Part shown: positions 44,176 through 64,000 of the stretch, one piece after another | Position numbering within the stretch: position 1 is the stretch's first letter | How the letters are laid out: each line of letters opens with the position of its first letter | IMG/VR virus record: IMGVR_UViG_3300042907_001080 | Location: 186,001 to 250,000 of that record | Length of the DNA: 64,000 nt | Strand: one strand, 5' to 3' | Program-made: the position numbers and the translations under genes | The notes under the pieces: model-generated | Told to the model about the DNA's origin: nothing | Database searches by the model: none | Seen by the model: the letters and a program-made list of their open reading frames with translations, nothing else

Positions 44176-45156
44176 ATGACACAAGACTTCACAAAGATAC
44201 CATTCCATAACATAACAAGATTTGGTCAACGCACCATGTTGCATCGCCCGTTATTTTCTACCAGTTGGATTTTGGGCCGTTTCTGTAATTATAACTGTTC
44301 TTACTGTTGGCCCTATGCTAGATCGGACAAGGTAGATCACCAGCCTTTAGAAGTATATACTAATACTGTAGATGAAATCAAACGACAGGCTCGACTAAAT
44401 GGCTTCAATGAATTCCATTGGAGTTTCAGTGGCGGTGAACCTACTGCTTACCGACAGCTACATGATTTGATTAAACACCTTGACGAAACAGAAAGCACAT
44501 ACCAAAGTATACACATGACAACCAATTTAAGTCCTGGAAGTAAATGGTGGAATACCTGGTGTGCCAACACAGCATTACTACAACGCAGAAGTATCACAGC
44601 ATCATTTCATGATGAGTTTGCTCGAGAGCAGGAATTCGGTGACAAGTGTCTACAGTTATTGCATGAGCGTGTGCATGTCACAGTCAATCAAGTAATGGTC
44701 CCGGAAAAGTTTTATGAGCTTTATGAACGCATGTCTCGGCTACATGCTCGTGGAATCAATGTTACGCTCAAACCGCAAAGTGATCCTACAGCGAGTCGTG
44801 TAGTCGATGGCTACACAACAGAAATGATTGATCTATTACAGACTGGATTTCCTCAAACATCACAAGGCGAAGACGTTTATCAAATAGCATTGTATGATAC
44901 AGACAACAAAGAATATTTGTTCGATCAAGCAGAAAGATTTAATGCTTTTGGTTTTAACAAATTCCAAGGTTGGAGTTGCAATAGTGGGTATCAAAGTGTT
45001 ATAATAAGAGGTAATGAAGTGAAACGATCATATAGCTGTCACGACCGACTATTAGGAACACTAGAGAGCTTTGAGCTTTTTAAAAAACCAACAGTTTGTA
45101 TAACACCTAGTTGTGTCAGCAGTGCTGATTCAAAGATACCAAAATGTATAAACTAG
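44176..45156 (+). CDS. radical SAM protein with C-terminal Cys-rich (twitch-like) domain
   Basis: CNYNCSYC, SGGEPT, TTN, C..G..SC...C...C. Confidence 0.92.
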   Translation: MTQDFTKIPFHNITRFGQRTMLHRPLFSTSWILGRFCNYNCSYCWPYARSDKVDHQPLEVYTNTVDEIKRQARLNGFNEFHWSFSGGEPTAYRQLHDLIKHLDETESTYQSIHMTTNLSPGSKWWNTWCANTALLQRRSITASFHDEFAREQEFGDKCLQLLHERVHVTVNQVMVPEKFYELYERMSRLHARGINVTLKPQSDPTASRVVDGYTTEMIDLLQTGFPQTSQGEDVYQIALYDTDNKEYLFDQAERFNAFGFNKFQGWSCNSGYQSVIIRGNEVKRSYSCHDRLLGTLESFELFKKPTVCITPSCVSSADSKIPKCIN

Positions 45157-46121
45157 AAAACATAAAAGACATACATCTAGAATTAACAAGTAAGTGTCAA
45201 GCACGATGCCCAATGTGTCCTCGCCGAGTTAACGGAGGGATACTAAATCCTATTATGTCGTTAAATGAGATAACACTAGAACAATTTAAAGAATGGTTCT
45301 CAGATGAATTTATAAATCAACTGGATAGTCTGTTTATGTGCGGCAATTTAGGTGATCCTATTATTGCTGAAGATTGTTTAGAGATATTTCAATACTTAAA
45401 AGAAACTAATCCTAACATACGATTGAGCATGCATACAAATGGTAGTGCTAGAAATATACACTGGTGGAAAAAATTAGCAAAGTATAAAGTTAAAGTTACA
45501 TTTGGAATAGACGGTTTAGAAGATACACACAAGTTATATCGAATAAGCACTAATTGGAACACCATTATAAAAAATGCCGAGTCATTTATAAAAGCTGGCG
45601 GCGAAGCAGAATGGCACATGTTAGTGTTTAAGCATAACGAACATCAAATTGAAGAATGCCGTGCGCTAAGTCACAAACTTGAATTTAAAAAATTCACAAC
45701 CAAGCATACTAGTCGTTTTAAAGATAACAAATTTCATGTATTGGACGAAACCGGCAAGACTGTTAATATTCTTTATCCTACTAAACTTAGCACTTCACAT
45801 ACAGTAAATGTGTTGTCAGTATTACCAGCAGAGATACAATGCAAGGCAAAGAAATATAGTCAACTATACATAAGTGCAGACGGAGGAGTTAGTCCGTGTT
45901 GCTGGTTGGATTTTTCCTGGCAGTTGCCTAACCAGGACAATAGAATAAATTATATGGATAAAATTGGAGTTTATCCTAACCTAAATAAACAGTCGTTAAT
46001 AGATATATTTAATTCTGGTTTCTTTAGTAAGATTGAAAGTACCTGGTCAGCCGTTCCTTTAATGGAATGCGGCAAACAATGTGGACATTTTGATAAGCTA
46101 GGAGAGCAATTTGTTAGTTGA
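45144..46121 (+). CDS. radical SAM/SPASM-twitch protein
   Basis: CQARCPMC, CGNLGDP, HTNG, FGIDG, VSPCC. Confidence 0.92.
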   Translation: MYKLENIKDIHLELTSKCQARCPMCPRRVNGGILNPIMSLNEITLEQFKEWFSDEFINQLDSLFMCGNLGDPIIAEDCLEIFQYLKETNPNIRLSMHTNGSARNIHWWKKLAKYKVKVTFGIDGLEDTHKLYRISTNWNTIIKNAESFIKAGGEAEWHMLVFKHNEHQIEECRALSHKLEFKKFTTKHTSRFKDNKFHVLDETGKTVNILYPTKLSTSHTVNVLSVLPAEIQCKAKKYSQLYISADGGVSPCCWLDFSWQLPNQDNRINYMDKIGVYPNLNKQSLIDIFNSGFFSKIESTWSAVPLMECGKQCGHFDKLGEQFVS

Positions 46122-46704
46122 TACAGAACACTTACATCACTGGATGCAAGCCATAAGACAAAGCCCAGATCCTATGAGGACCATGGATGCATTCTGGTCT
46201 GGACAACTTAAAAGCAAAGAATGGTTGATCTCAAATTTAAGAAAACACATTAATAAATTTGTAGGTATTGATATACATGGTGGCTGGGTTGGTGTACTAG
46301 CCAGTATGTTGTTCCAAAGTGATATCCCTATTATTAATATTCGTAGTGTTGATATTGACCCTACCTGCGAATCTATTGCAGTTAACATGAACAAGATTGA
46401 AGAAATGGTTGGCAAGTTTCGTGCTGTCACAGCAGACATGTGTGCTCTTCGCAGTGATGCAGATGTCATTATCAACACCAGTTGTGAACACATAACACAA
46501 GACCAATATGACATATGGTTAAGCGGAATGCCACATAGCAGCCTACTAGCATTGCAAAGCAATAATTATAATATAGATGAACATGTTAGGATTGCTAACA
46601 GTTTAGAAGAGTTTAAAAAACAATGCCATCTGGACAATATTTTGTATGCCGGGGAACTTGATTTGCCGTTGTACAAACGATTTATGATTATAGGAAAACA
46701 ATGA
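46111..46704 (+). CDS. class I SAM-dependent methyltransferase-like protein
   Basis: IHGGWVGVL, SVDIDP, INTSCEH. Confidence 0.75.
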   Translation: MLVDTEHLHHWMQAIRQSPDPMRTMDAFWSGQLKSKEWLISNLRKHINKFVGIDIHGGWVGVLASMLFQSDIPIINIRSVDIDPTCESIAVNMNKIEEMVGKFRAVTADMCALRSDADVIINTSCEHITQDQYDIWLSGMPHSSLLALQSNNYNIDEHVRIANSLEEFKKQCHLDNILYAGELDLPLYKRFMIIGKQ

Positions 46705-47435
46705 TAGAATTAGGGTTAGTTAAATGGTATAATGACGCAAAGAGATACGGGTTTATTAAAGCAGACTCGGATGGAGAATCTATTTTGGCACAGAGTCATT
46801 CTATTGTGGAAGAACCAAAGACTTTGAGAGAATTTCAACGTGTAACTTTTGAAAGATATGTAACTGATAATGGCCTAGAAGCACGTACTATAAATATCGC
46901 CATGAACCCAGATTTATCGATTTACGAACACGAAGTTATATCATTGAAAAAACAACGACTTCATCTTTCTTCATTTGTAGGACATGTCTTATTAGTGGTT
47001 AATACTGCCAGCCGATGCGGACTTACACCTCAGTACGAAGGATTAGAAAAATTATTTCAAAAATATAAAGATAAAAAATTTACAATCCTGGCATTTCCGA
47101 CAAACAATTTCGCAGGACAGGAGCCTAATACAAATGCCGAAATTTTAGATTTTTGTGAGACAAATTATAATGTAAGTTTTTATGTTATGGAAAAATCAAA
47201 TATTGTAGAACAGGATAGTTCAAGCCCTGCACAATTCGCCGAAACTGCACCTAGAGAAATAAATTCTTTTTATAAAGACCTTGCCACCAGAACAAATGTT
47301 TTACCGCAGTGGAATTTCCACAAGTATCTAATTAATCGTACGGGTTCTATTATTAAAAGTTTTGATCATTTGACTCAACCAGACAATGATGTATTAATTA
47401 ACGCAATCGAAGAATTTTTGGATAGTAACGTATGA
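46701..47435 (+). CDS. cold-shock domain / glutathione peroxidase fusion
   Basis: N-terminal GLVKWYNDAKRYGFI (CSD RNP1); C-terminal VNTASRCGLTPQY, AFPTNNF.GQEP, WNFHKYLI. Confidence 0.85.
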   Translation: MIELGLVKWYNDAKRYGFIKADSDGESILAQSHSIVEEPKTLREFQRVTFERYVTDNGLEARTINIAMNPDLSIYEHEVISLKKQRLHLSSFVGHVLLVVNTASRCGLTPQYEGLEKLFQKYKDKKFTILAFPTNNFAGQEPNTNAEILDFCETNYNVSFYVMEKSNIVEQDSSSPAQFAETAPREINSFYKDLATRTNVLPQWNFHKYLINRTGSIIKSFDHLTQPDNDVLINAIEEFLDSNV

Positions 47436-48358
47436 AAATATTAATGACTGGATCATCGGGATTTATCGGATCTCACTTAGCACCACTTTTAGAAAAAGAC
47501 CACACAGTTCATCATCTCAAAAGCGATCTAACAGATCACAAGAGTGTTCAGCTAGAAGTAGCTTCTGTACAACCAGATATCATTGTGCACCTAGCTGCAC
47601 GTACAGAAGTAGAACAAAGCTTCTATGAACAAATTACCTTTAGTGAAATAAACTATATAGGAACAGTTAATTTAATTGAAGCAGCCGCCTCTGTTAAAAA
47701 TTTAAAGAACTTTGTGTTTGCTAGTACTATGGAAGTTTATGGTTGGCAACCTATTAGTGATACTGTAAAAAATGGCGCCATACCTAAAGTATTTGAAACA
47801 TTTGATGAGAACACTCAGCCTAACCCCAATGCTCCTTATTCTGTAGCCAAATATGGATGTGAGAAATATTTAGAATACGCTTACAGATGTTATGGATTGC
47901 CATTTACTGCTATACGTCAAACAAACAGCTATGGTCGTAAAGATAACAAGTTTTTTGTTACAGAACAAATTATTAGTCAGATGCTAGAAAATTCCAAAGA
48001 AGTAAATCTTGGATATGCTGAACCATATAGAAATTTTATTTTTATTGACGACCTATTAGATGCTTGGATTACAGTTATTACAAATCCTGATAAAGTAAAC
48101 AGTGGACTAATACTTACTATTGGTCCTGATGCTCCTATAAAGATTAGGGATTATGCACAAAAAATTGCCAAAAAATTAAACTGGCAAGGAACGATTAATT
48201 GGGATACTAAATTGTTCAGGCCTGGGGAGATTTACTGGCTTAATAGCAATCACAATCTAATAACTAAATTAACTGGATGGTATCCTAAAGTCAGTTTAGA
48301 CGAGGGGCTAGATCAAACTATTAAAATCTGGAAAGAAAAATATGATAGTAGAACATAA
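47432..48358 (+). CDS. NAD-dependent nucleotide-sugar epimerase/dehydratase
   Basis: TGSSGFIG, HLAA, STMEVYG, YSVAK. Confidence 0.92.
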   Translation: MKILMTGSSGFIGSHLAPLLEKDHTVHHLKSDLTDHKSVQLEVASVQPDIIVHLAARTEVEQSFYEQITFSEINYIGTVNLIEAAASVKNLKNFVFASTMEVYGWQPISDTVKNGAIPKVFETFDENTQPNPNAPYSVAKYGCEKYLEYAYRCYGLPFTAIRQTNSYGRKDNKFFVTEQIISQMLENSKEVNLGYAEPYRNFIFIDDLLDAWITVITNPDKVNSGLILTIGPDAPIKIRDYAQKIAKKLNWQGTINWDTKLFRPGEIYWLNSNHNLITKLTGWYPKVSLDEGLDQTIKIWKEKYDSRT

Positions 48359-48974
48359 GTTAAACGATGTACCGAGAATATCTGTTTTTGATAATGTACT
48401 ATCTGCTGAATTTTGTAGAGGTATGATAGAAAAACATTCCAATGCTGGAATGAATTCTAATTCTGGTTATCAAAGTCGTGTTGAGTCGTATGCCCAAGTT
48501 ACAGAAGAAGTTGAAAATAGAGGAATTAGTCTAGGTGTTGATCCCTATGATTATGATATAATAGCAACAGCTATTGTTAATGTTGCTAAAATTCCATATT
48601 CTCACATAGAGGCTATTGATATTTACAACTATCACGAAGGACAGTATCTAGCTTATCATCACGATTACTGTTATGACCCTAGACAAATCAACTATTATAA
48701 AAACGGTGGCGACAGAGTTGGAACCGGTATTTTTTATTTTAATGATGATTTTGTAGGCGGAGAAACTTATTTTCCTAAATTTGATGTATCTATTACTCCT
48801 AAGACTGGTTCCTTTTTGTATTTTGAACAATGCTATGACGAAGCAACTAATTGGGACACAATACACGAAAGCAAACTAATTACCAAAGGAACTAAGTGGA
48901 TCGCTAGTTGCTTTTTTAGTGATAGGCCTAGAGTAGGATGGTCTAGTAGAGATCATTTGTATGCTAACGGATAA
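48342..48974 (+). CDS. prolyl 4-hydroxylase-like 2OG-Fe(II) oxygenase
   Basis: Y..GQY...HHD, GGDR..T.IFY.ND...GGET.FP, HES..ITKGTKW. Confidence 0.88.
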   Translation: MIVEHKLNDVPRISVFDNVLSAEFCRGMIEKHSNAGMNSNSGYQSRVESYAQVTEEVENRGISLGVDPYDYDIIATAIVNVAKIPYSHIEAIDIYNYHEGQYLAYHHDYCYDPRQINYYKNGGDRVGTGIFYFNDDFVGGETYFPKFDVSITPKTGSFLYFEQCYDEATNWDTIHESKLITKGTKWIASCFFSDRPRVGWSSRDHLYANG

Positions 48975-49665
48975 TTGGATTCCTTTTTACAAATATAATG
49001 ATCAAGGTGTGCCTGGATGCATGTCTCAGCAAACCTATGAACCGTTAATAAATCCGGAAGGAACTGTATACTGTGCCAACTACGATCATAATAATCTGTA
49101 TCAACGTAAATGGCAACCAGACCGTGTGGGTTACACTCAAGACATTGTTGAATATTTTTTTAACAAAGAAGTTGGATATGCACACAAATTTAGCAACAAG
49201 CTATGGGCGCCGGAAATTATAGATATAGATTATGTTAGCAAACGTATTTTTTATAAATGGTATGGGCCCACTTGCAACGAATTAATATATACAGGCAGAA
49301 CTTTACCATCTGATTGGAAATTACAACTTCGAAATATCATGATGGATTGTTATAATGAAGGAGTTTACAAACTTACAATGTATCCACATTGTCATTACTA
49401 TGATAACAGCGGAATTATGCACACGCTAGATATGTATGGGTGCGTTGAAGTAGATGATCCGTTTATTGAAGCAAAGTATATGGATGGGATAATTCACGAA
49501 ACCGCTAAATTTAGACTAGACGAGACCGGACCTAAAAACAATAATAGATATGATTTAGAAAAAATGTTCTTCAATAGTTTATGCACCCACGTAAAATGGG
49601 GAGAATGCGATTTAAATTTTGTCTATCAAAATATAATTGGAGATAGCGATGAAATATATAGGTAA
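48961..49665 (+). CDS. protein-kinase-like fold protein with degenerate catalytic motifs
   Basis: F.KEV..., APEIIDID...KRIF, W..QL..I..D....GVYKLTMYP, TLDMYG; paralog of 60250-60945. Confidence 0.5.
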   Translation: MLTDNWIPFYKYNDQGVPGCMSQQTYEPLINPEGTVYCANYDHNNLYQRKWQPDRVGYTQDIVEYFFNKEVGYAHKFSNKLWAPEIIDIDYVSKRIFYKWYGPTCNELIYTGRTLPSDWKLQLRNIMMDCYNEGVYKLTMYPHCHYYDNSGIMHTLDMYGCVEVDDPFIEAKYMDGIIHETAKFRLDETGPKNNNRYDLEKMFFNSLCTHVKWGECDLNFVYQNIIGDSDEIYR

Positions 49666-50281
49666 CTGCGCAGATAAAATAGATTGGAATGAAGTAATTA
49701 AATTATGCCAAGAGAGCGTAACAGGAGATAGAAACACTGTGGTCTCTGTGGTTGAAAGATCCGAAGTTAATTTACAGAATCGAGAACCTATGCAGGCCAA
49801 GGTTTTATTGTCGGTAGCAGAACAAATAGCCAACGAACAATTGCTTCAAGAGTATAGAAAAGTGATAGGAGATTGGCGTGATGCTGGATGTGACCTGGAT
49901 AAAATTTATTGGTATGATTACTATCCAGGGGATCATTATCCAGAAAGTATATCAGATACATTTGCTGCCATACTAGGAATTCGCCCATTAAGAGTTTTTG
50001 TAAGTGAAGTATATCCGGGTATTACAGTTCCCTATCACTGGGATGTAGAAGATAAGGGACCAGAATGGTTAAAAAAATACGGAATGCTTTATAGATATAC
50101 CTGCTGTATAGATGTGCCGAGGGTCGGAAGTGTATTAATCGTTGACGATCATTGTTTATATGATTTTAAGCAAGGAGACATTTTTGAATGGGATAGTTAT
50201 AGAAACTATCATTCAGCTGCCAACGGCGGCGAACACATACAGTATTATTTTCACATGTTAGGATATAAAATAAAATGTTAG
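49649..50281 (+). CDS. aspartyl/asparaginyl beta-hydroxylase-like 2OG-Fe(II) oxygenase
   Basis: VYPG..VPYHWD, GDIFEW....YHSAANGG; start revised (GGAGA SD). Confidence 0.78.
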   Translation: MKYIGNCADKIDWNEVIKLCQESVTGDRNTVVSVVERSEVNLQNREPMQAKVLLSVAEQIANEQLLQEYRKVIGDWRDAGCDLDKIYWYDYYPGDHYPESISDTFAAILGIRPLRVFVSEVYPGITVPYHWDVEDKGPEWLKKYGMLYRYTCCIDVPRVGSVLIVDDHCLYDFKQGDIFEWDSYRNYHSAANGGEHIQYYFHMLGYKIKC

Positions 50282-57288: not shown

Positions 57289-57986
57289 GATATTGCCCAT
57301 TGTCTTTCTTTACACCAAAAGCATTCGTTACAAACTGGAACGTATTGACCCGGTATATAGTTTTTATAATCAATGCCTACTATCTCGCCTTCACAACTGC
57401 GGGTAATTTCAAACAGATCCGTGAGGCCAAGCTCACTATACATTTTAACAATTTCTGACTTGTCTGTGAAGCGGAATGGATGATAAACCATAAAGCCCAT
57501 GTGTTCCATTTCTGCCAAATGCTTGTTGTCCTCTGTAGGGTCAATGTCACGTTCACTCATACCATTGAATTGTGCTAATCTTGGGTTACGGGTTACTCCG
57601 TTGTAAAACGCATCTATGTTATATTTCTTACAAATATACTCTGCGTAAGCTCTTGCTTGAATGTTGTCACCGCTCACTTGCTTACCATACTCGTCGGTTA
57701 AGTTTGGTCCTACATTGCCGTACTCTAAATCGGGCGCAATAAAGTTAATATGCCGTTTAAATGTTGTATGATAGAAATTTTGAAATAACCATTTACACAC
57801 AGTATCTGCATTGTCTTGTTGCCAAGGTTTGGTTTTCCAGCAACGTATATGATTAATGATATGTATAGTTATATTATGTTCTTTGGCTTTTTGGCAAACC
57901 ATATAGGCAAGTAATGCGCTATCGGCACCGCCACTAACGGCAATGGCAATGTTTTTCCATTTTGGATTGAAGGGTACCTTGAACAT
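57273..57986 (-). CDS. QueC-like PP-loop adenine nucleotide alpha-hydrolase
   Basis: VSGGADS, HPF...KSEIV, TRSC...CNECFWCKER; start revised to MFKVPF. Confidence 0.75.
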   Translation of the reverse strand: MFKVPFNPKWKNIAIAVSGGADSALLAYMVCQKAKEHNITIHIINHIRCWKTKPWQQDNADTVCKWLFQNFYHTTFKRHINFIAPDLEYGNVGPNLTDEYGKQVSGDNIQARAYAEYICKKYNIDAFYNGVTRNPRLAQFNGMSERDIDPTEDNKHLAEMEHMGFMVYHPFRFTDKSEIVKMYSELGLTDLFEITRSCEGEIVGIDYKNYIPGQYVPVCNECFWCKERQWAISCQDL

Positions 57987-57991
57987 GGATA

Positions 57992-58022
57992 TATTTACAC
58001 GAGTTATACTAGCACATAAATA
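57992..58022. promoter_or_regulatory. divergent TAAATA late-type promoter pair
   Basis: TAAATA 5 nt and 4 nt before the two divergent ATGs (57986 and 58027). Confidence 0.65.
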
Positions 58023-58026
58023 TTTC

Positions 58027-58695
58027 ATGATTAACATAACCATGTGGCAATGCCCAAAAGGACTAATAGAACAAGCATTATCAGAGTGCCCAATTGAAGG
58101 TAGTCGCACTGCCTTGAATACTCCAACCGGTGACTTCTTCTATGACAGTTGGCAAATCAAAGATGAGTTTAAAGGTACAGCGTGGGAAGAACTACTATCT
58201 ACTTTACCTTACACAATTGGAGAAGCTCGTGTTATTACACTTGATCCCAATCAAAGTTACATGTCCCACGCTGACATTGATAATCGTTGGCATTTAAACT
58301 TGTCGGGCGAGCAGTCATATTTGATAGATTTAGATAATCAAAAAATGTATAAACAACGTGTAGACAATCATTGGTGTTATATGTTTGCTAATAAAATACA
58401 TACTGCTAGTAATTACGGTAGTGTACCACGTAAACAACTTGTAGTTCGCGAACCGTTAAAACGTAGCCACCACAAAAATTTAATCAACGTTGAAATTACT
58501 CCAGCATACGAACAGTTTGACTATCGTTATCAGTTTGACAATATTATTAGCCCGTGGCTGAATCGTAAGAATCAAGAAGGCGTTCTTGACAACTTTGTTT
58601 ACAAAGATACGGTTGTATCCTTTAGTATAGCAGAAGATGTCCAAGGACAACTTGACGCAATTATTTCTAATAAGTTTAAAGTTATCTATGTTTAA
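58027..58695 (+). CDS. aspartyl/asparaginyl beta-hydroxylase-like 2OG-Fe(II) oxygenase
   Basis: GEARVI.L.P..SY..HAD..RWHL, IHTASNYG..PR..LV; start revised. Confidence 0.78.
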   Translation: MINITMWQCPKGLIEQALSECPIEGSRTALNTPTGDFFYDSWQIKDEFKGTAWEELLSTLPYTIGEARVITLDPNQSYMSHADIDNRWHLNLSGEQSYLIDLDNQKMYKQRVDNHWCYMFANKIHTASNYGSVPRKQLVVREPLKRSHHKNLINVEITPAYEQFDYRYQFDNIISPWLNRKNQEGVLDNFVYKDTVVSFSIAEDVQGQLDAIISNKFKVIYV

Positions 58696-59134
58696 AGTTG
58701 GAATTACTGGAACTACTCGCGGCCTCGGCCAAGCACTACATGACCACTTTGTCAATAAGGGCTATCATGTAACGGCCTTTAATAGAGGATCAGACATGAG
58801 TGCCGCGGTTGGATGTGATTTGTTTATCAACAATGCCTACGGCATACAAATGGATATACTTAACCAACTTTATGCGAGTGTTGGCAAGATGATTGTCATG
58901 GGCAGTATAGTTACAGATTTTCCCGATGTAGAAATGCCAGACTACACCGCACAAAAAACAAAATTAGAAGAACGTGTGTTAGAGCTTAACCTTCCTAACA
59001 TATTGTTATTAAAGCTATCTAGCACTGCTTACAACGATTCGCAAGTTGTAATTGACGCTATTGAGTATTGGCTAGCAAACCCGTTGGTTAATATTATATC
59101 TTTTAGAGCAATAGGCGGTCCAAATCGTGGATAA
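58688..59134 (+). CDS. short SDR-like oxidoreductase
   Basis: ITGTTRGLG, FINNA, YTAQK. Confidence 0.78.
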   Translation: MFKVGITGTTRGLGQALHDHFVNKGYHVTAFNRGSDMSAAVGCDLFINNAYGIQMDILNQLYASVGKMIVMGSIVTDFPDVEMPDYTAQKTKLEERVLELNLPNILLLKLSSTAYNDSQVVIDAIEYWLANPLVNIISFRAIGGPNRG

Positions 59135-59726
59135 AAAAATTATTGTAACCGGTCACACAAGCGGTGTTGGTAAAGCAATTTACGACAAGTTTAAAGAAAT
59201 AAGTTGTAGAGAAATTGTGGGAATGAGCCGTAGCAATGGATATGATATAGATAAAGACTTTGATAAGATTGTAGAAGAATCTACAGGCTGTGAACTGTTT
59301 ATTAATAATGCTTACAGAGACAGTCAGCAATTAAAATTAGTTGAAGCACTTAAAGACAAAGTAGACATGATGGTTGTTATGGGCAGTGTTAGTAGATTCT
59401 ATCCAGAACTTATTCCTACACAGTATGTACACGATAAACAAGCACTAGCGGAAGCCTGTAGACTTATTAGTTTAAATCCCAACGGTATTCCACTGCTACA
59501 TTTAGATTTAGGATTTATAGAAGGTACAACAGTAGAAGAAAACGACCCAACAGCCTTTGTTAGTGACTACACTACGTCCAAGGCCGACATTGTTGATACA
59601 ATTATCTTCTGGGCACAAAAGCCCTCTATTAGACAGATCGAGTTTAGATGGAAACTAACTCCGCAGGTCATGTCTGAATTAAAAAGAATTAATCCCGATT
59701 TAGATCCATCTAGGATAACGTTCTAG
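59127..59726 (+). CDS. SDR-like oxidoreductase
   Basis: VTGHTSGVG, FINNA, YVHDK. Confidence 0.8.
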   Translation: MDKKIIVTGHTSGVGKAIYDKFKEISCREIVGMSRSNGYDIDKDFDKIVEESTGCELFINNAYRDSQQLKLVEALKDKVDMMVVMGSVSRFYPELIPTQYVHDKQALAEACRLISLNPNGIPLLHLDLGFIEGTTVEENDPTAFVSDYTTSKADIVDTIIFWAQKPSIRQIEFRWKLTPQVMSELKRINPDLDPSRITF

Positions 59727-60257
59727 ATTCTCTAAAAATCTATCTCCGTATATTTTCCACACAGTTTGATCTGTGTACCTGTAATGAACTTCTTTAACAC
59801 GTTCCACTATGCCTATCTTTTCTAATGTGGGAAAATAATATCTGTGTACTAGCCTTTGACTCGCTACCTTGCTGTCATTAGATGTGGCATATATGTTTTC
59901 TTCTCCGACCCATGCTATACAGGCAGGTAATAAAAATTGGTCAGTTAGATTTTGATGTTCTGCAATTAGACGTTGGGGAGTTATTAATCCACCGTGTGGT
60001 CTTGCCGCACCAAACGTGCAGGTACGTGCTAACACCCTATAACTATCAGGCCCCATGACATCATCAAATGAGTGAGCTACTACACTACCGATGGCTTTAT
60101 TGTCCTGATACAGTATCCATGCTTTCCAGGATTTTTCATTGTGAAAACAATCTATCATGGATTTTTGACTGGAATTGTTTTCGAACCCTTTTTCTTTTGC
60201 TTCTTTATAAAACTCGGAAAGATCTAGATCAGAAGACCAATCTACAATATTATACAT
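59700..60257 (-). CDS. hypothetical protein, possible GNAT-like fold
   Basis: WILYQDNKAIGSVVAH..YRVLARTC..IYATSN..L.K.G; start revised. Confidence 0.5.
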   Translation of the reverse strand: MYNIVDWSSDLDLSEFYKEAKEKGFENNSSQKSMIDCFHNEKSWKAWILYQDNKAIGSVVAHSFDDVMGPDSYRVLARTCTFGAARPHGGLITPQRLIAEHQNLTDQFLLPACIAWVGEENIYATSNDSKVASQRLVHRYYFPTLEKIGIVERVKEVHYRYTDQTVWKIYGDRFLENLERYPRWI

Positions 60258-60945
60258 AAAGTTTTTTACACTCGTCCATAAAATCAGAAGGGAAGTTTGT
60301 TTTAAAACTTTCAAATGCTAACAGTTGTATGTCTTTAAAGGGAGTCGGCTTATCCACGTCTATTCCCATAGCAGACATTTTAGGAAATAGATCTGCTTGC
60401 CTATCTTCACTGATATGGCTCATTACGCTACGTAAACTAATAGCAGGATCGTGATCACGATAACAGAAAAAATAATTGATACTTTTAAGTTGACCGTTGA
60501 CAACAAAATAACTACTGGGATGTAGACTGTATTTGTAGATACCTAATGCTTTGTGTGCTTTAAATATTTCTAACATCTGTTCTCGCCAATTGGGCAGTAC
60601 ACTATCGTAGTCTTGTTTAATAGGATCAGATTGTTGCCAAAAGTCATCACCATCTATTTCAAGATAGAGTTTTCTTTTTTCTAAATCTATATTAATAATG
60701 TTGGGAACTAGGTGCGGAAATATATTACGCATTTGAGTAATAAAATTTACTTCGCGCAACCATTTTTCATTCATTAGACTAGGGTCTACTACTTGATTCT
60801 GACCTTTATGATAATCAGTATCGTTGTGGTACCATTGACAAAATGTTTTTTTATCTTTGCTAATTAAGCTGGTATAAATTAGGTTATTTCGGCAAAGGCC
60901 TTTTCCTGGAACATCGTTATAATAGTATTCATATTCTGCAGTCAT
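60250..60945 (-). CDS. protein-kinase-like fold protein with degenerate catalytic motifs
   Basis: WLREV.F...M...VPNIINID...RKLYLEI.G..., HKALGIYKYSLHPSS, LKSINYF; paralog of 48961-49665. Confidence 0.52.
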   Translation of the reverse strand: MTAEYEYYYNDVPGKGLCRNNLIYTSLISKDKKTFCQWYHNDTDYHKGQNQVVDPSLMNEKWLREVNFITQMRNIFPHLVPNIINIDLEKRKLYLEIDGDDFWQQSDPIKQDYDSVLPNWREQMLEIFKAHKALGIYKYSLHPSSYFVVNGQLKSINYFFCYRDHDPAISLRSVMSHISEDRQADLFPKMSAMGIDVDKPTPFKDIQLLAFESFKTNFPSDFMDECKKLYV

Positions 60946-60950: not shown

Positions 60951-60967
60951 TACTTATCAGCTAAGTA
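60951..60967. promoter_or_regulatory. divergent TAAGTA late-type promoter variant pair
   Basis: TAAGTA 5 nt before each of the divergent ATGs (60945 and 60973). Confidence 0.55.
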
Positions 60968-60972
60968 TTAAC

Positions 60973-61788
60973 ATGATTAGAGGAATTGGCGGCAAGCCTT
61001 ACATTAATTTAGATCCATTTTTGGATGTAAAAGGGTTTACAGAGTTACATCCAGAAATCTGTAAAGGTTTTGCTTTAGCAAGGGATTATGCCAAAGAAGG
61101 CACATGGATGGCTCCAGGCTTTGATCAAAGTCGAGGCAGTTATCAGTGGAACTGGAAACCGATATACAAAGCACATGAAGAATATCTTGCCTTGTCGAAT
61201 GATCATCCCATTAAAATTCAAGGTCAAGAAATATATCCTACAGATTTTAAAGACTACAAACAACGCAATTTATTCACACGTTATCTTAAAAGTGTATTAG
61301 GTGCTAACGATCCTTATACCTATTATTTTCTATGGAACGAAGGCGACTGGAATGAACGCAATGCTGAAAGACAAAAGACTGAGGAAAGCAACTTCTTTCC
61401 CGGTGTTGTTCAGTGGGTAGAAAATCTACAAGAACAAGGTATAATAGATCGCATAGGGCGTGTTATATTTTTTCTTTGCGATCATAACGGCAAAGCATTT
61501 GAACATCGAGACCTAGATGCTAAAAACGGTGTGTTTGAAAATGATTACTATACTCCGCATAATAACGAATTCATACATATAAGATATCGCACCAAGCGAG
61601 GTTTCTATATATGGGATCCCGACACACAAGACAAACACTATATTAATAGCCATGCTGCTATGTGGAACGATCAAGACTGGCACGGTGGGGAATCTAGCCT
61701 AGAACAAGAATACGGACTTAGAATTGACTGTAAGTTTACACAAGAATTCCGTAAACAAATTGGAATAGATCATTTAGAGAATTATTAA
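60973..61788 (+). CDS. putative 2OG-Fe(II) oxygenase (Asp-hydroxylase-like)
   Basis: GRVIFF..EHRD (HxD) ... WND.DWHGG....GLRID. Confidence 0.62.
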   Translation: MIRGIGGKPYINLDPFLDVKGFTELHPEICKGFALARDYAKEGTWMAPGFDQSRGSYQWNWKPIYKAHEEYLALSNDHPIKIQGQEIYPTDFKDYKQRNLFTRYLKSVLGANDPYTYYFLWNEGDWNERNAERQKTEESNFFPGVVQWVENLQEQGIIDRIGRVIFFLCDHNGKAFEHRDLDAKNGVFENDYYTPHNNEFIHIRYRTKRGFYIWDPDTQDKHYINSHAAMWNDQDWHGGESSLEQEYGLRIDCKFTQEFRKQIGIDHLENY

Positions 61789-62942
61789 TGTCTAATACAT
61801 ATTGCCCACTAGCCTGGATTGGCAGAAACATTTTACCTACTAGCATTCAACCTTGTTGTGAATGGTACGGTATTGGAGACCCGGTTGACAGTGCAGAAAA
61901 TATCGGACATAGTCCTGTATTTTTAAATGCTCGAGAAAAAATGAGTAAAGGAGAAAAAGTAGCCGGTTGTAAACAATGTTACTTAGCAGAAGAATCTGGT
62001 ATTAAATCTAGACGGCTACAGGCATTGGAACAATATGGGGTTGTAGATACTGTTGAAAGTAGAGTATTAGATGTTAGTTTTGACAATATATGTAACTTAA
62101 AATGTAGAGGATGTGCTTCGTCGAGCAGTCATCTTTGGTTTTCAGATGAAAAAGAAATATACAGTCACACTATTTTTGGTTCAAAATATGTTGAAAATAA
62201 TACTAATATAGATATTTCAGGATTGGAGTATGTCGGAGTTAGTGGAGGCGAACCGTTTTTAAGTAAAAAGTTTAACTCGTTTGCGGAAAAACTATTATCG
62301 ACACAAACGGCAAAAAATATATGTTTAACAATTAATACTAATGCAACTGTTAAACCTTCTCCTGCGGTATATGATCTAATTTTAACATGTAAAAATTTAA
62401 GTTTACAATTTAGCATAGACGGTATTGGGCACTTAAATTCTTATTTTAGAAGTGGCGCAACGTTTGAAGAATGTGAGAAAAATTTAAATTTCTTTAGAAA
62501 TCTAAAGACTCTAAGACAAGAAAAATCTACAAGTTTGGTCATACATACTACTGTTAGTTTATACAATGTAAATCTTCTTAAAGATATGGAAGACTACTTT
62601 CAAACAAATTATCCCGAATATGCGCTTACACATAGAAACTTATATTGGCCACCTCAACTATCAATTAGAAATCTTCCCCAACCGTATAAAGAAATTTTAA
62701 TTCCGATTGTTGAAAATTTTGGGGATAACTATAAAGATGTTTTATACGAATTAATATTAAATGAGCAGGATTATTTTAACCATTTTTTAAATTTTCATGT
62801 CAAGTTAGATTTATTAAGAAAAGAAAGTTTAAAAGATAGTAATCCATTGTTATCTGAATTTATAAAAAACTATCCTAGAGAATTAATAGATAGTAAAATC
62901 TTTTTTATTGAGCAAATGGATAAACTAAAATGCGGCACATAG
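61788..62942 (+). CDS. radical SAM protein with N-terminal twitch domain
   Basis: YCPLAW..QPCC..CKQC; CNLKCRGC; SGGEPF; NTN; FSIDG. Confidence 0.92.
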   Translation: MSNTYCPLAWIGRNILPTSIQPCCEWYGIGDPVDSAENIGHSPVFLNAREKMSKGEKVAGCKQCYLAEESGIKSRRLQALEQYGVVDTVESRVLDVSFDNICNLKCRGCASSSSHLWFSDEKEIYSHTIFGSKYVENNTNIDISGLEYVGVSGGEPFLSKKFNSFAEKLLSTQTAKNICLTINTNATVKPSPAVYDLILTCKNLSLQFSIDGIGHLNSYFRSGATFEECEKNLNFFRNLKTLRQEKSTSLVIHTTVSLYNVNLLKDMEDYFQTNYPEYALTHRNLYWPPQLSIRNLPQPYKEILIPIVENFGDNYKDVLYELILNEQDYFNHFLNFHVKLDLLRKESLKDSNPLLSEFIKNYPRELIDSKIFFIEQMDKLKCGT

Positions 62943-63427
62943 GTAATTACAAACATTGGGTAAATCCGCTATGGGAACACTTGGTGTTAACTAGGACAGG
63001 ACAGGCAAGGCCCCGCGACTGGCCGGCATCAACTGCGGTTGAAGCAACTGAATACAAAACATATAAAGAAGCAGGCTATGATTTAAATGCAGTTAATTGG
63101 TGGGTCTATGAAGAACGCGATTTAAATATAGATATCTCTCCTCCTTGGACAACCGGTCAATTACACTGGTGGATCACTAAACTATTACCAGGGCAATACA
63201 TGCCCATGCACACCGATCCTCATACACATGATACTAATTGTTCTCGTTATTGGATCCCGTTGCAGGATTATCATCCCGGACACATATTTGTATACAAGGA
63301 TGAAATGATTACTAATTACAAAAAAGGTGATGTATATGCTTACACTAGTTCTACAGATTTACATGGCGCAGCAAATATAGGTCATATACCTCGACTTGTT
63401 TTACAAATTACAGAATATGATATCTAA
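62930..63427 (+). CDS. aspartyl/asparaginyl beta-hydroxylase-like 2OG-Fe(II) oxygenase
   Basis: KLLPGQYMPMHTD, RYWIPL, HGAANIG..PRLVLQIT. Confidence 0.82.
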   Translation: MRHIGNYKHWVNPLWEHLVLTRTGQARPRDWPASTAVEATEYKTYKEAGYDLNAVNWWVYEERDLNIDISPPWTTGQLHWWITKLLPGQYMPMHTDPHTHDTNCSRYWIPLQDYHPGHIFVYKDEMITNYKKGDVYAYTSSTDLHGAANIGHIPRLVLQITEYDI

Positions 63428-64000
63428 AACATACTGTGTGTATCCTTTTATAAGTTCTAGTCTGCAAGCAGATAACACAGTTCTGCCCTGCGGACAGTTT
63501 ATGAAATCTACCTTGTTTCAAAATATTATTCCAATTAATGACGTAAGACAAGGTTCTGTAATGCAAGAAATGCGTAGAAAAATGTTAAACGGCGAACGAG
63601 TAGAAGGGTGCCAATGCTACGCCGAAGAAGAAATAGGCATTTCGTCAATGCGGCAAAGCGGCCTTAACAAATATGAATTTACTACTGACACCACAATAAA
63701 AAAATTAGAATTAGTTATGGATAACATCTGTAACATAAAATGCAGAAGTTGTGGATCACCTAATAGTCATACCTGGCACGAGGATGAAATAAAAATTTAT
63801 GGGGAATCTTTTTCTAAGAAAAAATACATTAAAAATACTCTATATAAAGATCTCGAGTTAGATAGCTTAGTTGAAATAGAAGTTCTTGGTGGCGAACCAA
63901 TGTACAGTCCTGGAACTAAAGATTTTTTTAAACTATTAAAGAATAAAGGAATTTTAGAAAATCTTTCTATACAGCTAAGTACAAACGGAACTGTAGAACC
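63417..64000 (+). CDS. radical SAM protein with N-terminal twitch domain (3'-truncated by window; not in ORF track)
   Basis: Manual translation MISKTYCVYPF..LPC..GCQC..CNIKCRSC..LGGEP..STNG. Confidence 0.88.
   Translation, partial: MISKTYCVYPFISSSLQADNTVLPCGQFMKSTLFQNIIPINDVRQGSVMQEMRRKMLNGERVEGCQCYAEEEIGISSMRQSGLNKYEFTTDTTIKKLELVMDNICNIKCRSCGSPNSHTWHEDEIKIYGESFSKKKYIKNTLYKDLELDSLVEIEVLGGEPMYSPGTKDFFKLLKNKGILENLSIQLSTNGTVE

What the first reader, a model, noticed from the sequence alone, without database searches (positions are those of the whole stretch)
44176..64000. Phage-encoded radical SAM / 2OG-oxygenase tailoring super-cluster (at least 9 radical SAM, 6 Fe/2OG oxygenases)
Seen in sequence: about 26 tightly overlapping genes over 20 kb, continuing past the window edge. 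Nine carry CxxxCxxC radical SAM motifs with extra N- or C-terminal Cys-rich SPASM/twitch domains (44176, 45144, 51022, 52370, 53454, 54557, 55443, 61788, 63417). Six are HxD..H oxygenases (Asp/Asn- and Pro-hydroxylase-like). The rest include a methyltransferase, an NDP-sugar epimerase, two SDRs, SGNH-like, GNAT-like and PP-loop ATPase proteins, two kinase-fold proteins and a peroxidase. Established: SPASM/twitch radical SAMs and AspH/P4H enzymes mainly modify peptides/proteins or sugars. No scaffold synthase (NRPS/PKS), DNA glycosylase/transglycosylase or exporter is visible. Inference: this is a multi-step modification assembly line acting on a macromolecule such as virion proteins, a virion glycan, a peptide or DNA, and I do not know of a characterised pathway of this kind.
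Basis: partly seen in the sequence, partly recalled or inferred. Interest (0 to 1): 0.92.

Follow-up and report, generated by a model that had tools for sequence, protein, structure and literature searches.

The report
Jumbo-phage radical SAM sugar-tailoring island
A giant phage common in lake water carries a conserved block of about 40 enzyme genes, 13 of them radical SAM enzymes, that most likely builds and attaches an unusual, heavily modified sugar whose identity and target are still unknown.

Summary
Window 44176-64000 holds 26 back-to-back ORFs, and nine are radical SAM (rSAM) enzymes by motif and by Pfam. Identical public contigs show the block runs about 12.5 kb past the window edge. 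In total it spans about 32 kb, about 40 genes and 13 rSAMs, ending at a tail-fibre gene. It is syntenic in relatives, one on a 384-kb contig.

My evidence favours a carbohydrate or cyclitol over a peptide:
- Five rSAMs belong to NCBIfam NF033640 (N-terminal twitch domain).
- One gene is a StrB1-type inosamine-phosphate amidinotransferase (PDB 1bwd, 1e-94).
- One rSAM is a TokK-like B12 methylase.
- The island also has an NDP-sugar epimerase/dehydratase, small-molecule kinase folds and GT-A- and GT-B-like proteins.
- The nearest cellular homologues (45-53% identity for four core genes) lie in Bdellovibrionota loci flanked by GT2, GT-C, AsnB-like and UDP-sugar dehydrogenase genes.

I found no precursor peptide, RRE domain, protease, exporter, cyclitol synthase or DNA-base enzyme.

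Smaller uncharacterised versions are published: Campylobacter phages CP220/CPt10 and cyanophage S-SCSM2R. I call it a large new variant of a known, unexplained kind. Product and acceptor remain unknown.

The parts
44176..45156 (+). Radical SAM enzyme, family B (paralogues 53454 and 54557). Core gene.
   Evidence: CNYNCSYC motif. Pfam Radical_SAM 2e-11. 49-53% identical homologues in Bdellovibrionota loci. 77% identical in L009.
45144..46121 (+). Radical SAM enzyme with a C-terminal SPASM domain. Core gene.
   Evidence: Pfam Radical_SAM 1.5e-11 and SPASM 1.1e-6. 37-42% identical bacterial homologues next to the 44176 homologue. Best match to the CP220 rSAMs.
46111..46704 (+). Core gene.
   Evidence: No Pfam match. 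29-41% identical homologues in 17 bacterial loci, next to the core rSAMs. 83% identical in L009.
46701..47435 (+). Cold-shock domain fused to a glutathione peroxidase (Cys active site)
   Evidence: Pfam CSD 1.9e-9 and GSHPx 2e-29. Active site VVNTASRCG.
47432..48358 (+). NDP-sugar epimerase/dehydratase (extended SDR)
   Evidence: Pfam Epimerase 1.6e-40 and GDP_Man_Dehyd 4.7e-40. PDB matches to UDP-glucose 4-epimerase and dTDP-glucose 4,6-dehydratase.
48342..48974 (+). Fe(II)/2-oxoglutarate oxygenase (P4H-like)
   Evidence: Pfam 2OG-FeII_Oxy_3 4.8e-9.
48961..49665 (+). Probable small-molecule kinase fold, paralogue of 60250
   Evidence: BLASTP to 60250 at 1.7e-6. The fold assignment is transferred.
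49637..50281 (+). AspH-like cupin, paralogue of 50275 and 62930
   Evidence: BLASTP 2e-22 to 50275. phmmer 8e-5 to the S-SCSM2R 2OG oxygenase. No direct Pfam match.
50275..50820 (+). AspH-like cupin paralogue
   Evidence: BLASTP to 49637 and 62930. No direct Pfam match.
50825..51025 (+). 66-aa ORF without cysteine. Function unknown; not a convincing precursor peptide.
   Evidence: 56% identical 57-aa ORF at the same place in L010, but absent in L009.
51022..52422 (+). N-terminal-twitch radical SAM enzyme (NF033640). Core gene.
   Evidence: NCBIfam N_Twi_rSAM 407 bits, cut-off 170. 83-89% identical in more than 100 metagenome clusters. Forms an orthogroup with 20 bacterial genes, support 1.0.
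52370..53464 (-). Radical SAM enzyme with an N-terminal SPASM/twitch-like domain, divergent
   Evidence: Pfam SPASM 1.5e-12 at residues 31-81; Radical_SAM 28.7 bits, just under the gathering score. NF033640 only 62 bits.
53454..54560 (-). Radical SAM enzyme, family B
   Evidence: CNYDCSYC motif. Pfam Radical_SAM 1.2e-11. 33-39% identical bacterial homologues.
54557..55450 (-). Radical SAM enzyme, family B
   Evidence: CNYDCTYC motif. Pfam Radical_SAM 1.2e-12.
55443..56720 (-). N-terminal-twitch radical SAM enzyme (NF033640). Public gene calls start at 56690.
   Evidence: NF033640 314 bits. 87% identical in L009 and L010. Own bacterial subfamily, support 0.999.
56680..57300 (-). SGNH-like hydrolase/esterase (tentative)
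   Evidence: N-terminal FGCSFTLG and C-terminal DNNHPG motifs read in the sequence. No Pfam match.
57273..58109 (-). PP-loop ATP pyrophosphatase. Public gene calls give 237 aa, 57273-57986.
   Evidence: Pfam ATP_bind_3 3e-5 and QueC 2.9e-5. NCBIfam TilS N-terminal domain 1.9e-7. Several paralogues in bacterial loci.
57943..58695 (+). AspH-type beta-hydroxylase-like cupin. Public gene calls start at 58042.
   Evidence: PDB 7v4f 'Beta-hydroxylase' 1.5e-6.
58637..59134 (+). Short SDR-like Rossmann protein, paralogue of 59127
   Evidence: Pfam adh_short 3.4e-5. BLASTP 9e-16 to 59127.
59127..59726 (+). Short SDR-like Rossmann protein
   Evidence: Weak adh_short/KR/Epimerase matches. An HMM of a recurrent bacterial neighbour family matches at 1.7e-8.
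59700..60314 (-).
   Evidence: No family match. 70-72% identical in L009 and L010.
60250..60945 (-). Kinase fold of the APH/Kdo/RIO type (small-molecule or sugar kinase)
   Evidence: Protein atlas: nearest named clusters carry APH, Kdo and RIO1 families; structure rows match Bud32/RIO kinases.
60973..61788 (+). Unknown conserved protein
   Evidence: No family or PDB match. 71-76% identical in relatives.
61788..62942 (+). N-terminal-twitch radical SAM enzyme (NF033640)
   Evidence: NF033640 217 bits. 36% identical to the next paralogue, 63417.
62930..63427 (+). AspH-like cupin
   Evidence: BLASTP 1.3e-5 to L005 12663-13145, which matches Asp_Arg_Hydrox at 3.4e-6. phmmer 2.5e-8 to the S-SCSM2R 2OG oxygenase.
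63417..64000 (+). N-terminal-twitch radical SAM enzyme, cut by the window end. The full gene is L005 1823-2977, 384 aa.
   Evidence: NF033640 233 bits for the full protein. L005 is identical to the window over the overlap.

Best explanation
The block is one conserved cytoplasmic pathway. It converts a common activated sugar (or a cyclitol phosphate) into a heavily tailored amino/guanidino sugar. The island's own transferase-like proteins then move it onto a macromolecular acceptor. The most likely acceptors are the phage's fibre or virion proteins, or glycan precursors of the host envelope.

Shown here:
- The gene content and its conservation across relatives.
- The family memberships: NF033640 twitch rSAMs, a StrB1-type amidinotransferase, a TokK-like B12 rSAM and an NDP-sugar epimerase/dehydratase.
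- Homology of the core genes to Bdellovibrionota loci flanked by glycan genes.

Inferred division of labour:
- The epimerase/dehydratase and the short SDRs make keto and deoxy intermediates.
- The aminotransferase-like protein adds an amine, and the amidinotransferase turns it into a guanidine using arginine.
- The two kinase-fold proteins and the PP-loop ATPase activate intermediates.
- The twitch, SPASM and other rSAMs carry out oxidation, epimerisation or deoxygenation at unactivated carbons. This is what the twitch enzyme BtrN and the rSAM enzymes AprD4 and DesII do on sugars and cyclitols (my background knowledge).
- The B12 rSAM adds C-methyl groups.
- The AspH-like and P4H-like cupins hydroxylate.
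- The GT-A+methyltransferase protein and the two GT-B-like paralogues transfer the product.
- The peroxidase in the block and the SOD nearby protect the oxygen-sensitive Fe-S enzymes in an aerobic host.
For: 1. StrB1-type amidinotransferase: full-length match to PDB 1bwd at 1e-94, with the GGFHCATLD active-site motif. It is 79% identical in a relative whose contig is 384 kb.
2. NDP-sugar epimerase/dehydratase inside the block. In relative L009, UDP-Glc/GDP-Man dehydrogenase and epimerase genes sit directly upstream of the first rSAM, co-oriented with it, and a CTP_transf_3 gene is nearby.
3. Five rSAMs score above the curated cut-off of NF033640. Of the 74 cellular loci kept, 62 are Bdellovibrionota, and many also hold homologues of 44176, 45144, 46111, the aminotransferase-like protein, the amidinotransferase, the PP-loop ATPase and the B12 rSAM.
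4. Those bacterial loci are flanked by GT2 glycosyltransferases (28 genes in 12 loci), PMT_2 GT-C, an AsnB-type amidotransferase and UDP-sugar dehydrogenase.
5. Three phage twitch-rSAM subfamilies each group with their own bacterial subfamily (support 0.99-1.0). The multi-gene set is therefore shared, not a phage-only expansion.
6. L005 2974-4200 (pLDDT 90.5) matches GT-A proteins (LH3, LARGE1, Mimivirus R699, GLT25D1) plus a class-I methyltransferase domain.
7. L005 7671-8837 (pLDDT 92) matches viral proteins that include a fusion to UDP-Glc dehydrogenase (1.7e-8) and WcaK-like, WabH-like and DNA alpha-GT proteins.
8. In cyanophage S-SCSM2R and Campylobacter phage CP220, homologues of the amidinotransferase and of island rSAMs (plus the small cupin in S-SCSM2R) are interleaved with annotated glycosyltransferases.
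9. The B12 rSAM matches TokK (7kdx, 7e-77) and the KedN5 family.
10. Both kinase-fold proteins resemble APH/Kdo kinases.
11. A KdsA-like gene and a PHROG glycosyltransferase lie 10 kb upstream.
12. Strong conservation: 40-89% identity with kept synteny in L009 and L010.
Against: - No nucleotidyltransferase, no clear Pfam-level glycosyltransferase and no cyclitol synthase was found in the island itself.
- The two GT assignments rest on weak fold matches: PDB E-values of 7e-5 and 0.02.
- All proteins are soluble, and there is no flippase, polymerase or polyprenyl-phosphate enzyme. An envelope glycan would therefore need host machinery.
- AspH- and P4H-type oxygenases and SPASM rSAMs are best known from protein and peptide chemistry.
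- No member of NF033640 has a known substrate, as far as I could find.
- No expression data could be obtained.
Confidence: 0.5

Rival explanations
1. Protein or peptide (RiPP-like) modification. The rSAM, SPASM and twitch enzymes and the AspH/P4H-type oxygenases crosslink, epimerise, methylate and hydroxylate side chains of a phage peptide or of the giant fibre proteins encoded next to the island.
For: - SPASM and twitch domains and weak similarities to many RiPP maturases.
- Asp_Arg_Hydrox and 2OG-FeII_Oxy_3 families.
- The island lies between fibre genes: 833-2485-aa fibre-like ORFs upstream and an Mtd_N fibre protein downstream.
- The GT-A model resembles collagen-modifying LH3 and GLT25D1.
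- Two small ORFs follow or precede rSAM genes.
Against: - No PqqD/RRE domain, peptidase or transporter turned up in any Pfam or NCBIfam scan.
- All RiPP-maturase matches are 20-60 bits against cut-offs of 300-700.
- The 66-aa and 32-aa ORFs have no Cys, and the 66-aa ORF is missing in L009.
- The fibre ORFs have no collagen-like repeats.
- This reading does not explain the StrB1-type amidinotransferase, the NDP-sugar enzyme, the kinases or the glycan context of the bacterial homologues.
Confidence: 0.12
2. DNA hypermodification. The island makes a sugar- or guanidino-bearing group that is attached to bases of the phage genome to evade host nucleases.
For: - ThyX sits directly upstream.
- A QueD/PTPS-like gene lies at 34988-35515, and the PP-loop ATPase has a faint QueC match.
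- The GT-B-like model weakly matches a cyanophage DNA alpha-glucosyltransferase (1.2e-3).
- From memory, not checked here: Campylobacter phages with the analogous module have fully modified guanines.
- All proteins are cytoplasmic.
Against: - No base hydroxymethylase, DpdA/TGT, 5-hmdU kinase or DNA glycosylase-like gene occurs in the 81 kb examined.
- The PP-loop protein scores far below the QueC cut-off (15 against 150 bits) and has tandem paralogues in bacterial glycan loci.
- The bacterial homologous clusters sit with GT2 and GT-C envelope genes.
Confidence: 0.12
3. A free aminocyclitol or aminoglycoside-like metabolite. The island would be a true natural-product cluster whose diffusible product acts on the host or on competitors.
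For: - The amidinotransferase is closest to streptomycin StrB1, not to glycine amidinotransferase (1e-94 against 3e-57).
- Aminoglycoside pathways use a twitch rSAM (BtrN), AprD4, B12 methylases, kinases, aminotransferases and NDP-sugar enzymes (background knowledge; AprD4 appears).
- The S-SCSM2R authors labelled the homologous genes 'antibiotic synthesis genes' (PMC12801897).
Against: - No inositol-phosphate or 2-deoxy-scyllo-inosose synthase, resistance gene or exporter was seen.
- The bacterial relatives lie in surface-glycan contexts.
- The phage relatives interleave the genes with glycosyltransferases of LPS type (GT25, GT2).
- A translation inhibitor would also hurt the phage itself.
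Confidence: 0.13
4. No common pathway. The block is a hypervariable bin of unrelated auxiliary genes that happen to be rSAMs and oxygenases.
For: - Such islands between structural modules are common in large myoviruses.
- The order of the second half is rearranged between relatives.
- One assembly has a split amidinotransferase.
Against: - The same roughly 40 genes stay together at 40-89% identity in relatives, one on a 384-kb contig.
- Four core genes are also neighbours in many Bdellovibrionota genomes.
- Genes overlap translationally.
Confidence: 0.06

Closest known systems
rSAM + amidinotransferase module of Campylobacter phages CP220/CPt10 (Timms et al. 2010, PMC2853527)
   Same: T4-like phages with 11-12 rSAM genes. 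One module has five rSAMs, a pentein-fold amidinotransferase and two GT-A-like genes. The function is unexplained. The amidinotransferases match at phmmer 1e-46, and the CP220 rSAMs match 45144, 53454 and 54557.
   Different: Identity is only 25-30% for the amidinotransferase. CP220 gave no hit to the twitch rSAM 51022 at E<=1e-5, and its annotation lists no B12 rSAM or AspH-like cupins. That module has about 12 genes against about 40 here, and it carries a PAP2 membrane phosphatase that is absent here.
'Antibiotic synthesis genes' block of cyanophage S-SCSM2R (PMC12801897)
   Same: Homologues of three island genes lie in one run: rSAM_306 matches L005 5980-6801 (1e-77), 2OG_308 matches the small cupins (1e-11), and the inosamine amidinotransferase matches at 3.5e-56 and 35% identity. 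Many 2OG oxygenases surround them.
   Different: It has one rSAM, not 13. Annotated GT2, GT25 and other GTs are interleaved, whereas the island here has only GT-like folds. It comes from a marine cyanophage, not a freshwater jumbo phage.
Multi-rSAM loci of Bdellovibrionota (uncharacterised; found here)
   Same: They hold homologues of 44176 (49-53%), 45144 (37-42%), 46111 (29-41%) and 51022 (44-48%). They also hold the aminotransferase-like protein, the amidinotransferase (40-42%), the PP-loop ATPase, an AspH-like cupin and a B12 rSAM. Each phage twitch-rSAM subfamily has its own bacterial partner.
   Different: The bacterial loci carry membrane GT-C, GT2, AsnB-like and UDP-sugar dehydrogenase genes, and tandem arrays of up to seven twitch rSAMs. 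Their product is equally unknown.
Aminoglycoside/aminocyclitol pathways (streptomycin StrB1; butirosin BtrN; apramycin AprD4; gentamicin GenK)
   Same: A StrB1-type amidinotransferase, twitch-domain rSAMs, a B12 rSAM C-methylase, kinases, an aminotransferase-like protein and an NDP-sugar enzyme.
   Different: No cyclitol synthase, no recognisable pathway-specific GT, and no resistance or export gene. The rSAMs are not orthologues of BtrN or AprD4 (no significant PDB sequence match for 51022). The twitch domain is N-terminal.
RiPP radical SAM/SPASM maturase clusters
   Same: Several rSAMs with auxiliary Fe-S domains lie in one cluster, with oxygenases alongside.
   Different: No precursor peptide, RRE, protease or exporter. 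All matches to RiPP maturase models are far below their cut-offs.
Marine T4-like environmental genome TARA_ERS488813_N000010 with 12 rSAM genes (Nishimura et al. 2017, PMC5332604)
   Same: An uncultured large myovirus with a dozen rSAM genes, noted as unusual.
   Different: It was discussed only in terms of Fe-S cluster supply. Its relationship to this island was not tested here.

Membership tests
NCBIfam NF033640 (N_Twi_rSAM, twitch domain-containing radical SAM protein) | Full-length HMM score above the curated cut-off (170 bits) | tested here: met
   51022 scores 407, 55443 scores 314, 61788 scores 217, L005 1823-2977 scores 233 and L005 10001-10927 scores 202 bits. 52370 scores only 62 bits and is not a member by this test.
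NCBIfam NF033640 (N_Twi_rSAM) | N-terminal Cys-rich auxiliary-cluster domain before the CxxxCxxC radical SAM core | tested here: met
   Invariant C21, C39 and C99 (C40 and C96 shared by 51022 and 55443) lie upstream of C153/C157/C160 in the paralogue alignments. Pfam SPASM matches at residues 17-99.
StrB1-type L-arginine:inosamine-phosphate amidinotransferase | Full-length similarity and the catalytic Cys motif | tested here: met
   PDB 1bwd at 1e-94 over residues 2-351, with GGFHCATLD conserved. Glycine amidinotransferase matches only at 3e-57. The substrate was not tested.
Aminocyclitol/aminoglycoside biosynthetic cluster | A cyclitol-forming enzyme (inositol-phosphate synthase or 2-deoxy-scyllo-inosose synthase) | tested here: not met
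   No such family appears in any Pfam or NCBIfam scan of the island's roughly 40 proteins or of the window ORFs scanned. The rest of the roughly 282-kb genome was not examined.
Aminocyclitol/aminoglycoside biosynthetic cluster | A self-resistance or export gene | tested here: not met
   No exporter family was found, and only one hydrophobic segment occurs in the whole island. The APH-like kinase folds could be biosynthetic or protective, which is unresolved.
RiPP biosynthetic cluster | A conserved precursor peptide next to the maturases | tested here: not met
   The only small ORFs (66 aa at 50825; 32 aa at L005 10917) have no Cys. The 66-aa ORF is absent from relative L009.
RiPP biosynthetic cluster | An RRE/PqqD-like recognition domain, a leader peptidase or a transporter | tested here: not met
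   None was reported in the Pfam or NCBIfam scans. A fold-level search for RRE domains was not done.
Surface-glycan (O-antigen/capsule-type) locus | Nucleotide-sugar modifying enzymes | tested here: met
   47432 is an epimerase/dehydratase. Relative L009 adds UDP-Glc/GDP-Man dehydrogenase and CTP_transf_3.
Surface-glycan (O-antigen/capsule-type) locus | Glycosyltransferases | tested here: inconclusive
   There are no Pfam GT matches in the island. There are only fold-level resemblances: GT-A at E=7e-5 and GT-B-like at PDB E=0.02, with BFVD matches of 1e-8 to 1e-3. GTs are clear in the bacterial and cultured-phage counterparts.
Surface-glycan (O-antigen/capsule-type) locus | Flippase, polymerase, exporter or polyprenyl-phosphate transferase | tested here: not met
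   All island proteins are soluble. A GT-C (PMT_2) gene is present only in the bacterial loci.
Phage DNA hypermodification system | An enzyme that acts on a base or on DNA (hydroxymethylase, DpdA/TGT, 5-hmdU kinase, DNA glycosyltransferase) | tested here: inconclusive
   None was found in the 81 kb examined. ThyX and a PTPS/QueD-like gene are present, and there is a weak fold match to a DNA alpha-GT. The rest of the genome was not seen.
Class B (cobalamin-dependent) radical SAM methylase | A B12-binding domain plus an rSAM core, with similarity to characterised methylases | tested here: met
   L005 13142-14950 carries B12-binding and Radical_SAM domains. It matches TokK (7kdx) at 7e-77 and CysS at 4.5e-37. 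It scores 191 bits for the KedN5 family, below that family's cut-off of 700, so it is a relative and not a member of KedN5.

The most novel reading that the evidence does not exclude
A globally distributed freshwater jumbo phage encodes a complete route, shared with predatory Bdellovibrionota, to a new class of radical-tailored, C-methylated, guanidino-bearing sugar or aminocyclitol. The N-terminal-twitch rSAM family (NF033640) would be a previously unrecognised family of carbohydrate-editing radical enzymes. The product would decorate the virion or the phage DNA, or act as a phage-made aminoglycoside-like effector.
Probability: 0.2. Interest if true: 0.9.

Novelty: new variant of a known kind. 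Interest (0 to 1): 0.62.

Why it matters
- It would assign a substrate class to a large orphan rSAM family (NF033640). That family has thousands of viral and Bdellovibrionota members: more than 4,000 homologues of one gene alone.
- It would explain why some large phages carry a dozen oxygen-sensitive radical enzymes, a puzzle noted since 2010.
- The island is a compact, conserved set of about 40 genes from an abundant, nearly clonal lake phage. That makes it a tractable source of new carbohydrate radical chemistry.
- It may be a new example of virus-made glycans or metabolites shaping infection.
- The link to predatory bacteria raises a testable question about gene flow, or about a shared strategy between two kinds of bacterial predators.

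Tried and rejected
- Nucleotide search of cultured phages: no match for either half of the window.
- tblastn of 51022 and 44176 against cultured phages: only weak hits, to RsoM2USA, Vibrio K566/567 and CP21.
- PDB sequence searches gave nothing useful for 51022, 45144, 60973, 57273 or the bacterial fusion of 46111.
- Pfam at E<=5 gave nothing for 46111, 48961, 49637, 50275, 56680, 59700, 60250 or 60973.
- Pfam on 60 relatives of L005 7671-8837 gave no family.
- Collagen-like repeats in the fibre ORFs, tested as possible P4H or LH3-type substrates: none.
- Selenocysteine or read-through candidates: none; the peroxidase has Cys.
- tRNAs: none in the window. Promoter and terminator scans were at chance level.
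- RNA runs to test expression: none was listed.
- HMMs of 34 recurrent bacterial neighbour families against the island: only the SDR family matched.
- Literature searches for a described function of this island or of NF033640 found none.
- A paper on freshwater amoC phages proved unrelated.

Full report
**What is there**

Window 44176-64000 holds 26 ORFs, 25 complete and one cut by the window end. They leave almost no non-coding DNA: 23 of 25 junctions overlap and 99.8% is coding with longest-ORF starts. G+C falls from about 0.44 to 0.33-0.38 at the start of the block.

Seven of the nine reach the gathering score; 52370 (28.7 bits) and the truncated 63417 (23.7 bits) fall just below it. None of the 33 upstream ORFs has the motif. 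Cysteine is three times more frequent in the block.

**The genome it sits in**

The rest of the window is phage. It has a gp44-type clamp loader whose best relatives are the jumbo phages PA5oct, Atu_ph07 and XacN1 at 40-49% identity. It also has fibre-like proteins of 833-2485 aa, ThyX, an endonuclease and a glycosyltransferase.

No cultured phage matches at the nucleotide level. Exact copies of the proteins occur in well over a hundred blocks of the public assembly collection. The runs that hold the sequence in full (all sampled words) are lake-water metagenomes from 2020-2024. An IMG/VR contig of 281,658 bp carries an identical amidinotransferase gene and is probably the near-complete genome.

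**Full extent of the island**

Contigs identical to the window (0-1 mismatch over 2-12 kb) continue the block about 12.5 kb past the window edge. This stretch adds:
- the rest of 63417;
- rSAMs of 336, 273 and 308 aa, and a 602-aa B12-binding rSAM;
- three Asp_Arg_Hydrox-type cupins;
- an aminotransferase-like protein;
- two 388/393-aa paralogues and a 408-aa protein;
- a 353-aa amidinotransferase.

The next gene is a fibre protein with an Mtd_N domain. The island is thus about 32 kb with about 40 genes and 13 rSAMs, and fibre genes lie on both sides.

**Internal structure**

All-against-all comparison shows paralogue families:
- six rSAMs with an N-terminal Cys domain (51022, 52370, 55443, 61788, 63417 and L005 10001);
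- three of a second type (44176, 53454, 54557);
- two of a third type;
- four small cupins;
- two kinase-like proteins;
- two short SDR-like proteins;
- the 388/393-aa pair.

Five of the six N-terminal-domain rSAMs score above the curated cut-off of NCBIfam NF033640, 'twitch domain-containing radical SAM protein'. Their invariant N-terminal cysteines fit one auxiliary cluster.

**Conservation**

Homologues of 51022 number in the thousands. The best 120 are 83-89% identical and lie on contigs of up to 384 kb. Two such relatives keep the same genes in nearly the same order at 40-89% protein identity. The second half is kept too, with rearrangements, and the amidinotransferase is 79% identical.

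This argues for one selected functional unit. One assembly has a 5-nt length change that splits the amidinotransferase, which is either a rare pseudogene or an assembly error.

**Clues to the substrate**

- The 353-aa protein is a full-length relative of StrB1, the inosamine-phosphate amidinotransferase of streptomycin biosynthesis (PDB 1bwd, 1e-94). It keeps the catalytic motif, and glycine amidinotransferases score much lower.
- The B12 rSAM matches the carbapenem C-methylase TokK (7e-77) and the KedN5 family.
- 47432 is an NDP-sugar epimerase/dehydratase.
- 60250, and by paralogy 48961, looks like an APH/Kdo/RIO-type kinase.
- A confident model of the 408-aa protein (pLDDT 90.5) resembles GT-A glycosyltransferases followed by a class-I methyltransferase domain, at modest E-values.
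- A confident model of the 388-aa protein (pLDDT 92) has no significant PDB match. It does match viral proteins, including one fused to UDP-glucose dehydrogenase and WcaK-like, WabH-like and DNA alpha-GT proteins.
- In relative L009, UDP-Glc/GDP-Man dehydrogenase and epimerase genes directly precede the first rSAM.
- All island proteins are soluble.

**Cellular relatives**

A scan of one genome per prokaryotic species with the 51022/55443 alignment kept 74 loci, of which 62 are from Bdellovibrionota. These include complete chromosomes and an isolate.

Many of these loci also carry neighbours homologous to 44176 (49-53%), 45144 (37-42%) and 46111 (29-41%). They carry the aminotransferase-like protein, the amidinotransferase (40-42%), the PP-loop ATPase, an AspH-like cupin and B12 rSAMs. 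Some have up to seven twitch rSAMs in tandem.

Their recurrent other neighbours are GT2 glycosyltransferases, a PMT_2 GT-C enzyme, an AsnB-type amidotransferase, UDP-sugar dehydrogenase, an FAD amine oxidase and SDRs. This is the make-up of a surface-glycan locus.

In a tree of 196 twitch rSAMs, three phage subfamilies each group with their own bacterial subfamily, with support 0.99-1.0. The multi-gene set is therefore shared between the phages and these bacteria. I cannot infer the direction of transfer, or whether Bdellovibrionota are the hosts.

**Published precedents**

- Timms et al. (PMC2853527) reported 11-12 rSAM genes in Campylobacter phages CP220 and CPt10, and a swappable module with five rSAMs and an amidinotransferase. 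The record shows two GT-A-like genes beside it.
- Nishimura et al. (PMC5332604) noted a marine T4-like genome with 12 rSAM genes.
- The S-SCSM2R paper (PMC12801897) called an aminotransferase, an rSAM and an inosamine amidinotransferase 'antibiotic synthesis genes'. In that genome these genes are interleaved with four to five annotated glycosyltransferases and 2OG oxygenases.

The S-SCSM2R rSAM, small 2OG protein and amidinotransferase are clear homologues of island genes, at 1e-77, 1e-11 and 3.5e-56. Other viral contigs keep a minimal trio of small cupin, aminotransferase-like protein and amidinotransferase. None of these has a known product.

**Interpretation**

The best-supported reading is a cytoplasmic pathway that tailors an activated sugar (or a cyclitol phosphate) and hands it to a macromolecular acceptor. 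The tailoring would be oxidation or epimerisation, deoxygenation, amination, guanidinylation, C-methylation, hydroxylation and perhaps acylation.

The family memberships and genomic contexts are shown by the tool results. The step assignments and the acceptor are inference. The position between fibre genes and the absence of membrane or export functions lean towards virion proteins, or towards feeding host glycan assembly. DNA and a free metabolite remain open.

The peroxidase in the island and the Fe/Mn SOD at 31301-31888 would fit protection of 13 oxygen-sensitive enzymes in an aerobic host. This too is inference.

**Rivals**

- A RiPP or protein-modification role fits the AspH/P4H and SPASM families and the fibre neighbourhood. 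It lacks a precursor, RRE, protease and transporter, and it does not explain the sugar-type enzymes.
- DNA hypermodification fits ThyX, the QueD-like gene and the cytoplasmic location. No base-acting enzyme was seen.
- A free aminoglycoside-like product fits StrB1 and the rSAM types. It lacks a cyclitol synthase and export or resistance genes.
- A random bin of auxiliary genes is contradicted by the conservation.

**Verdict**

This is the largest and most elaborate version yet of a recurring phage module that has been noticed in print but never explained. It has a newly found counterpart in Bdellovibrionota glycan loci. I rate it a new variant of a known kind, of moderately high interest, with a real chance of yielding new radical carbohydrate chemistry.

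Noticed in passing
window 46701-47435 (+); L010 7215-8042: A cold-shock (nucleic-acid-binding) domain is fused to a glutathione peroxidase. In a relative, the cold-shock domain is fused to a 2OG-Fe(II) oxygenase instead of a peroxidase, within the same syntenic run of genes. Why a nucleic-acid-binding domain is attached to these enzymes is unexplained.
   Followed up: partly
window 31301-31888 (-), 33180-33986 (-), 33946-34806 (-), 34988-35515 (-): An Fe/Mn superoxide dismutase, a PHROG glycosyltransferase, a DAHP_synth_1/KdsA-like gene and a PTPS/QueD-like gene lie among the fibre genes about 10 kb upstream of the island. They may belong functionally to it.
   Followed up: partly
window 5250-30292 (-): A run of very large Thr/Gly/Asp-rich fibre-like ORFs (833, 975, 1393, 1625, 596 and 2485 aa) has almost no family matches, apart from a weak tail-spike PHROG hit for 21045-22835, and no collagen repeats.
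   Followed up: partly
window 58583: There is a single T/C difference between the window and four otherwise identical public assemblies over 12.2 kb. The population is nearly clonal across lakes and years.
   Followed up: no
L006 11605-12661: In one assembly (GCA_043532895.1) a 5-nt length change splits the amidinotransferase into 82-aa and 238-aa ORFs. This is either a pseudogene variant or an assembly error.
   Followed up: no
L038 2282-12572; L034 2919-11235: Bdellovibrionota chromosomes carry tandem arrays of up to seven N-terminal-twitch rSAM genes next to GT2, GT-C, AsnB-like and UDP-sugar dehydrogenase genes. This is an undescribed feature of these predatory bacteria.
   Followed up: partly
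L005 14972-16444 (-), 17635-17853 (-), 19179-19406 (-): Directly after the island come a 490-aa protein with an Mtd_N (tropism determinant) domain, an IF1/eIF-1a-like 72-aa ORF and an Rpb6-like 75-aa ORF.
   Followed up: no
L012 (PUNK01000001.1, 3.5 kb, labelled Thermoplasmata MAG): This short contig carries genes 53-65% identical to 51022, 53454 and 54557 and groups with the phage clade in the tree. It is probably a phage fragment binned into an archaeal MAG.
   Followed up: no
L099-L103 (IMG/VR contigs): More distant viral contigs keep only a trio of small AspH-like cupin, aminotransferase-like protein and amidinotransferase (53-56% identity), without the rSAM set. This may be the minimal ancestral module.
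   Followed up: partly
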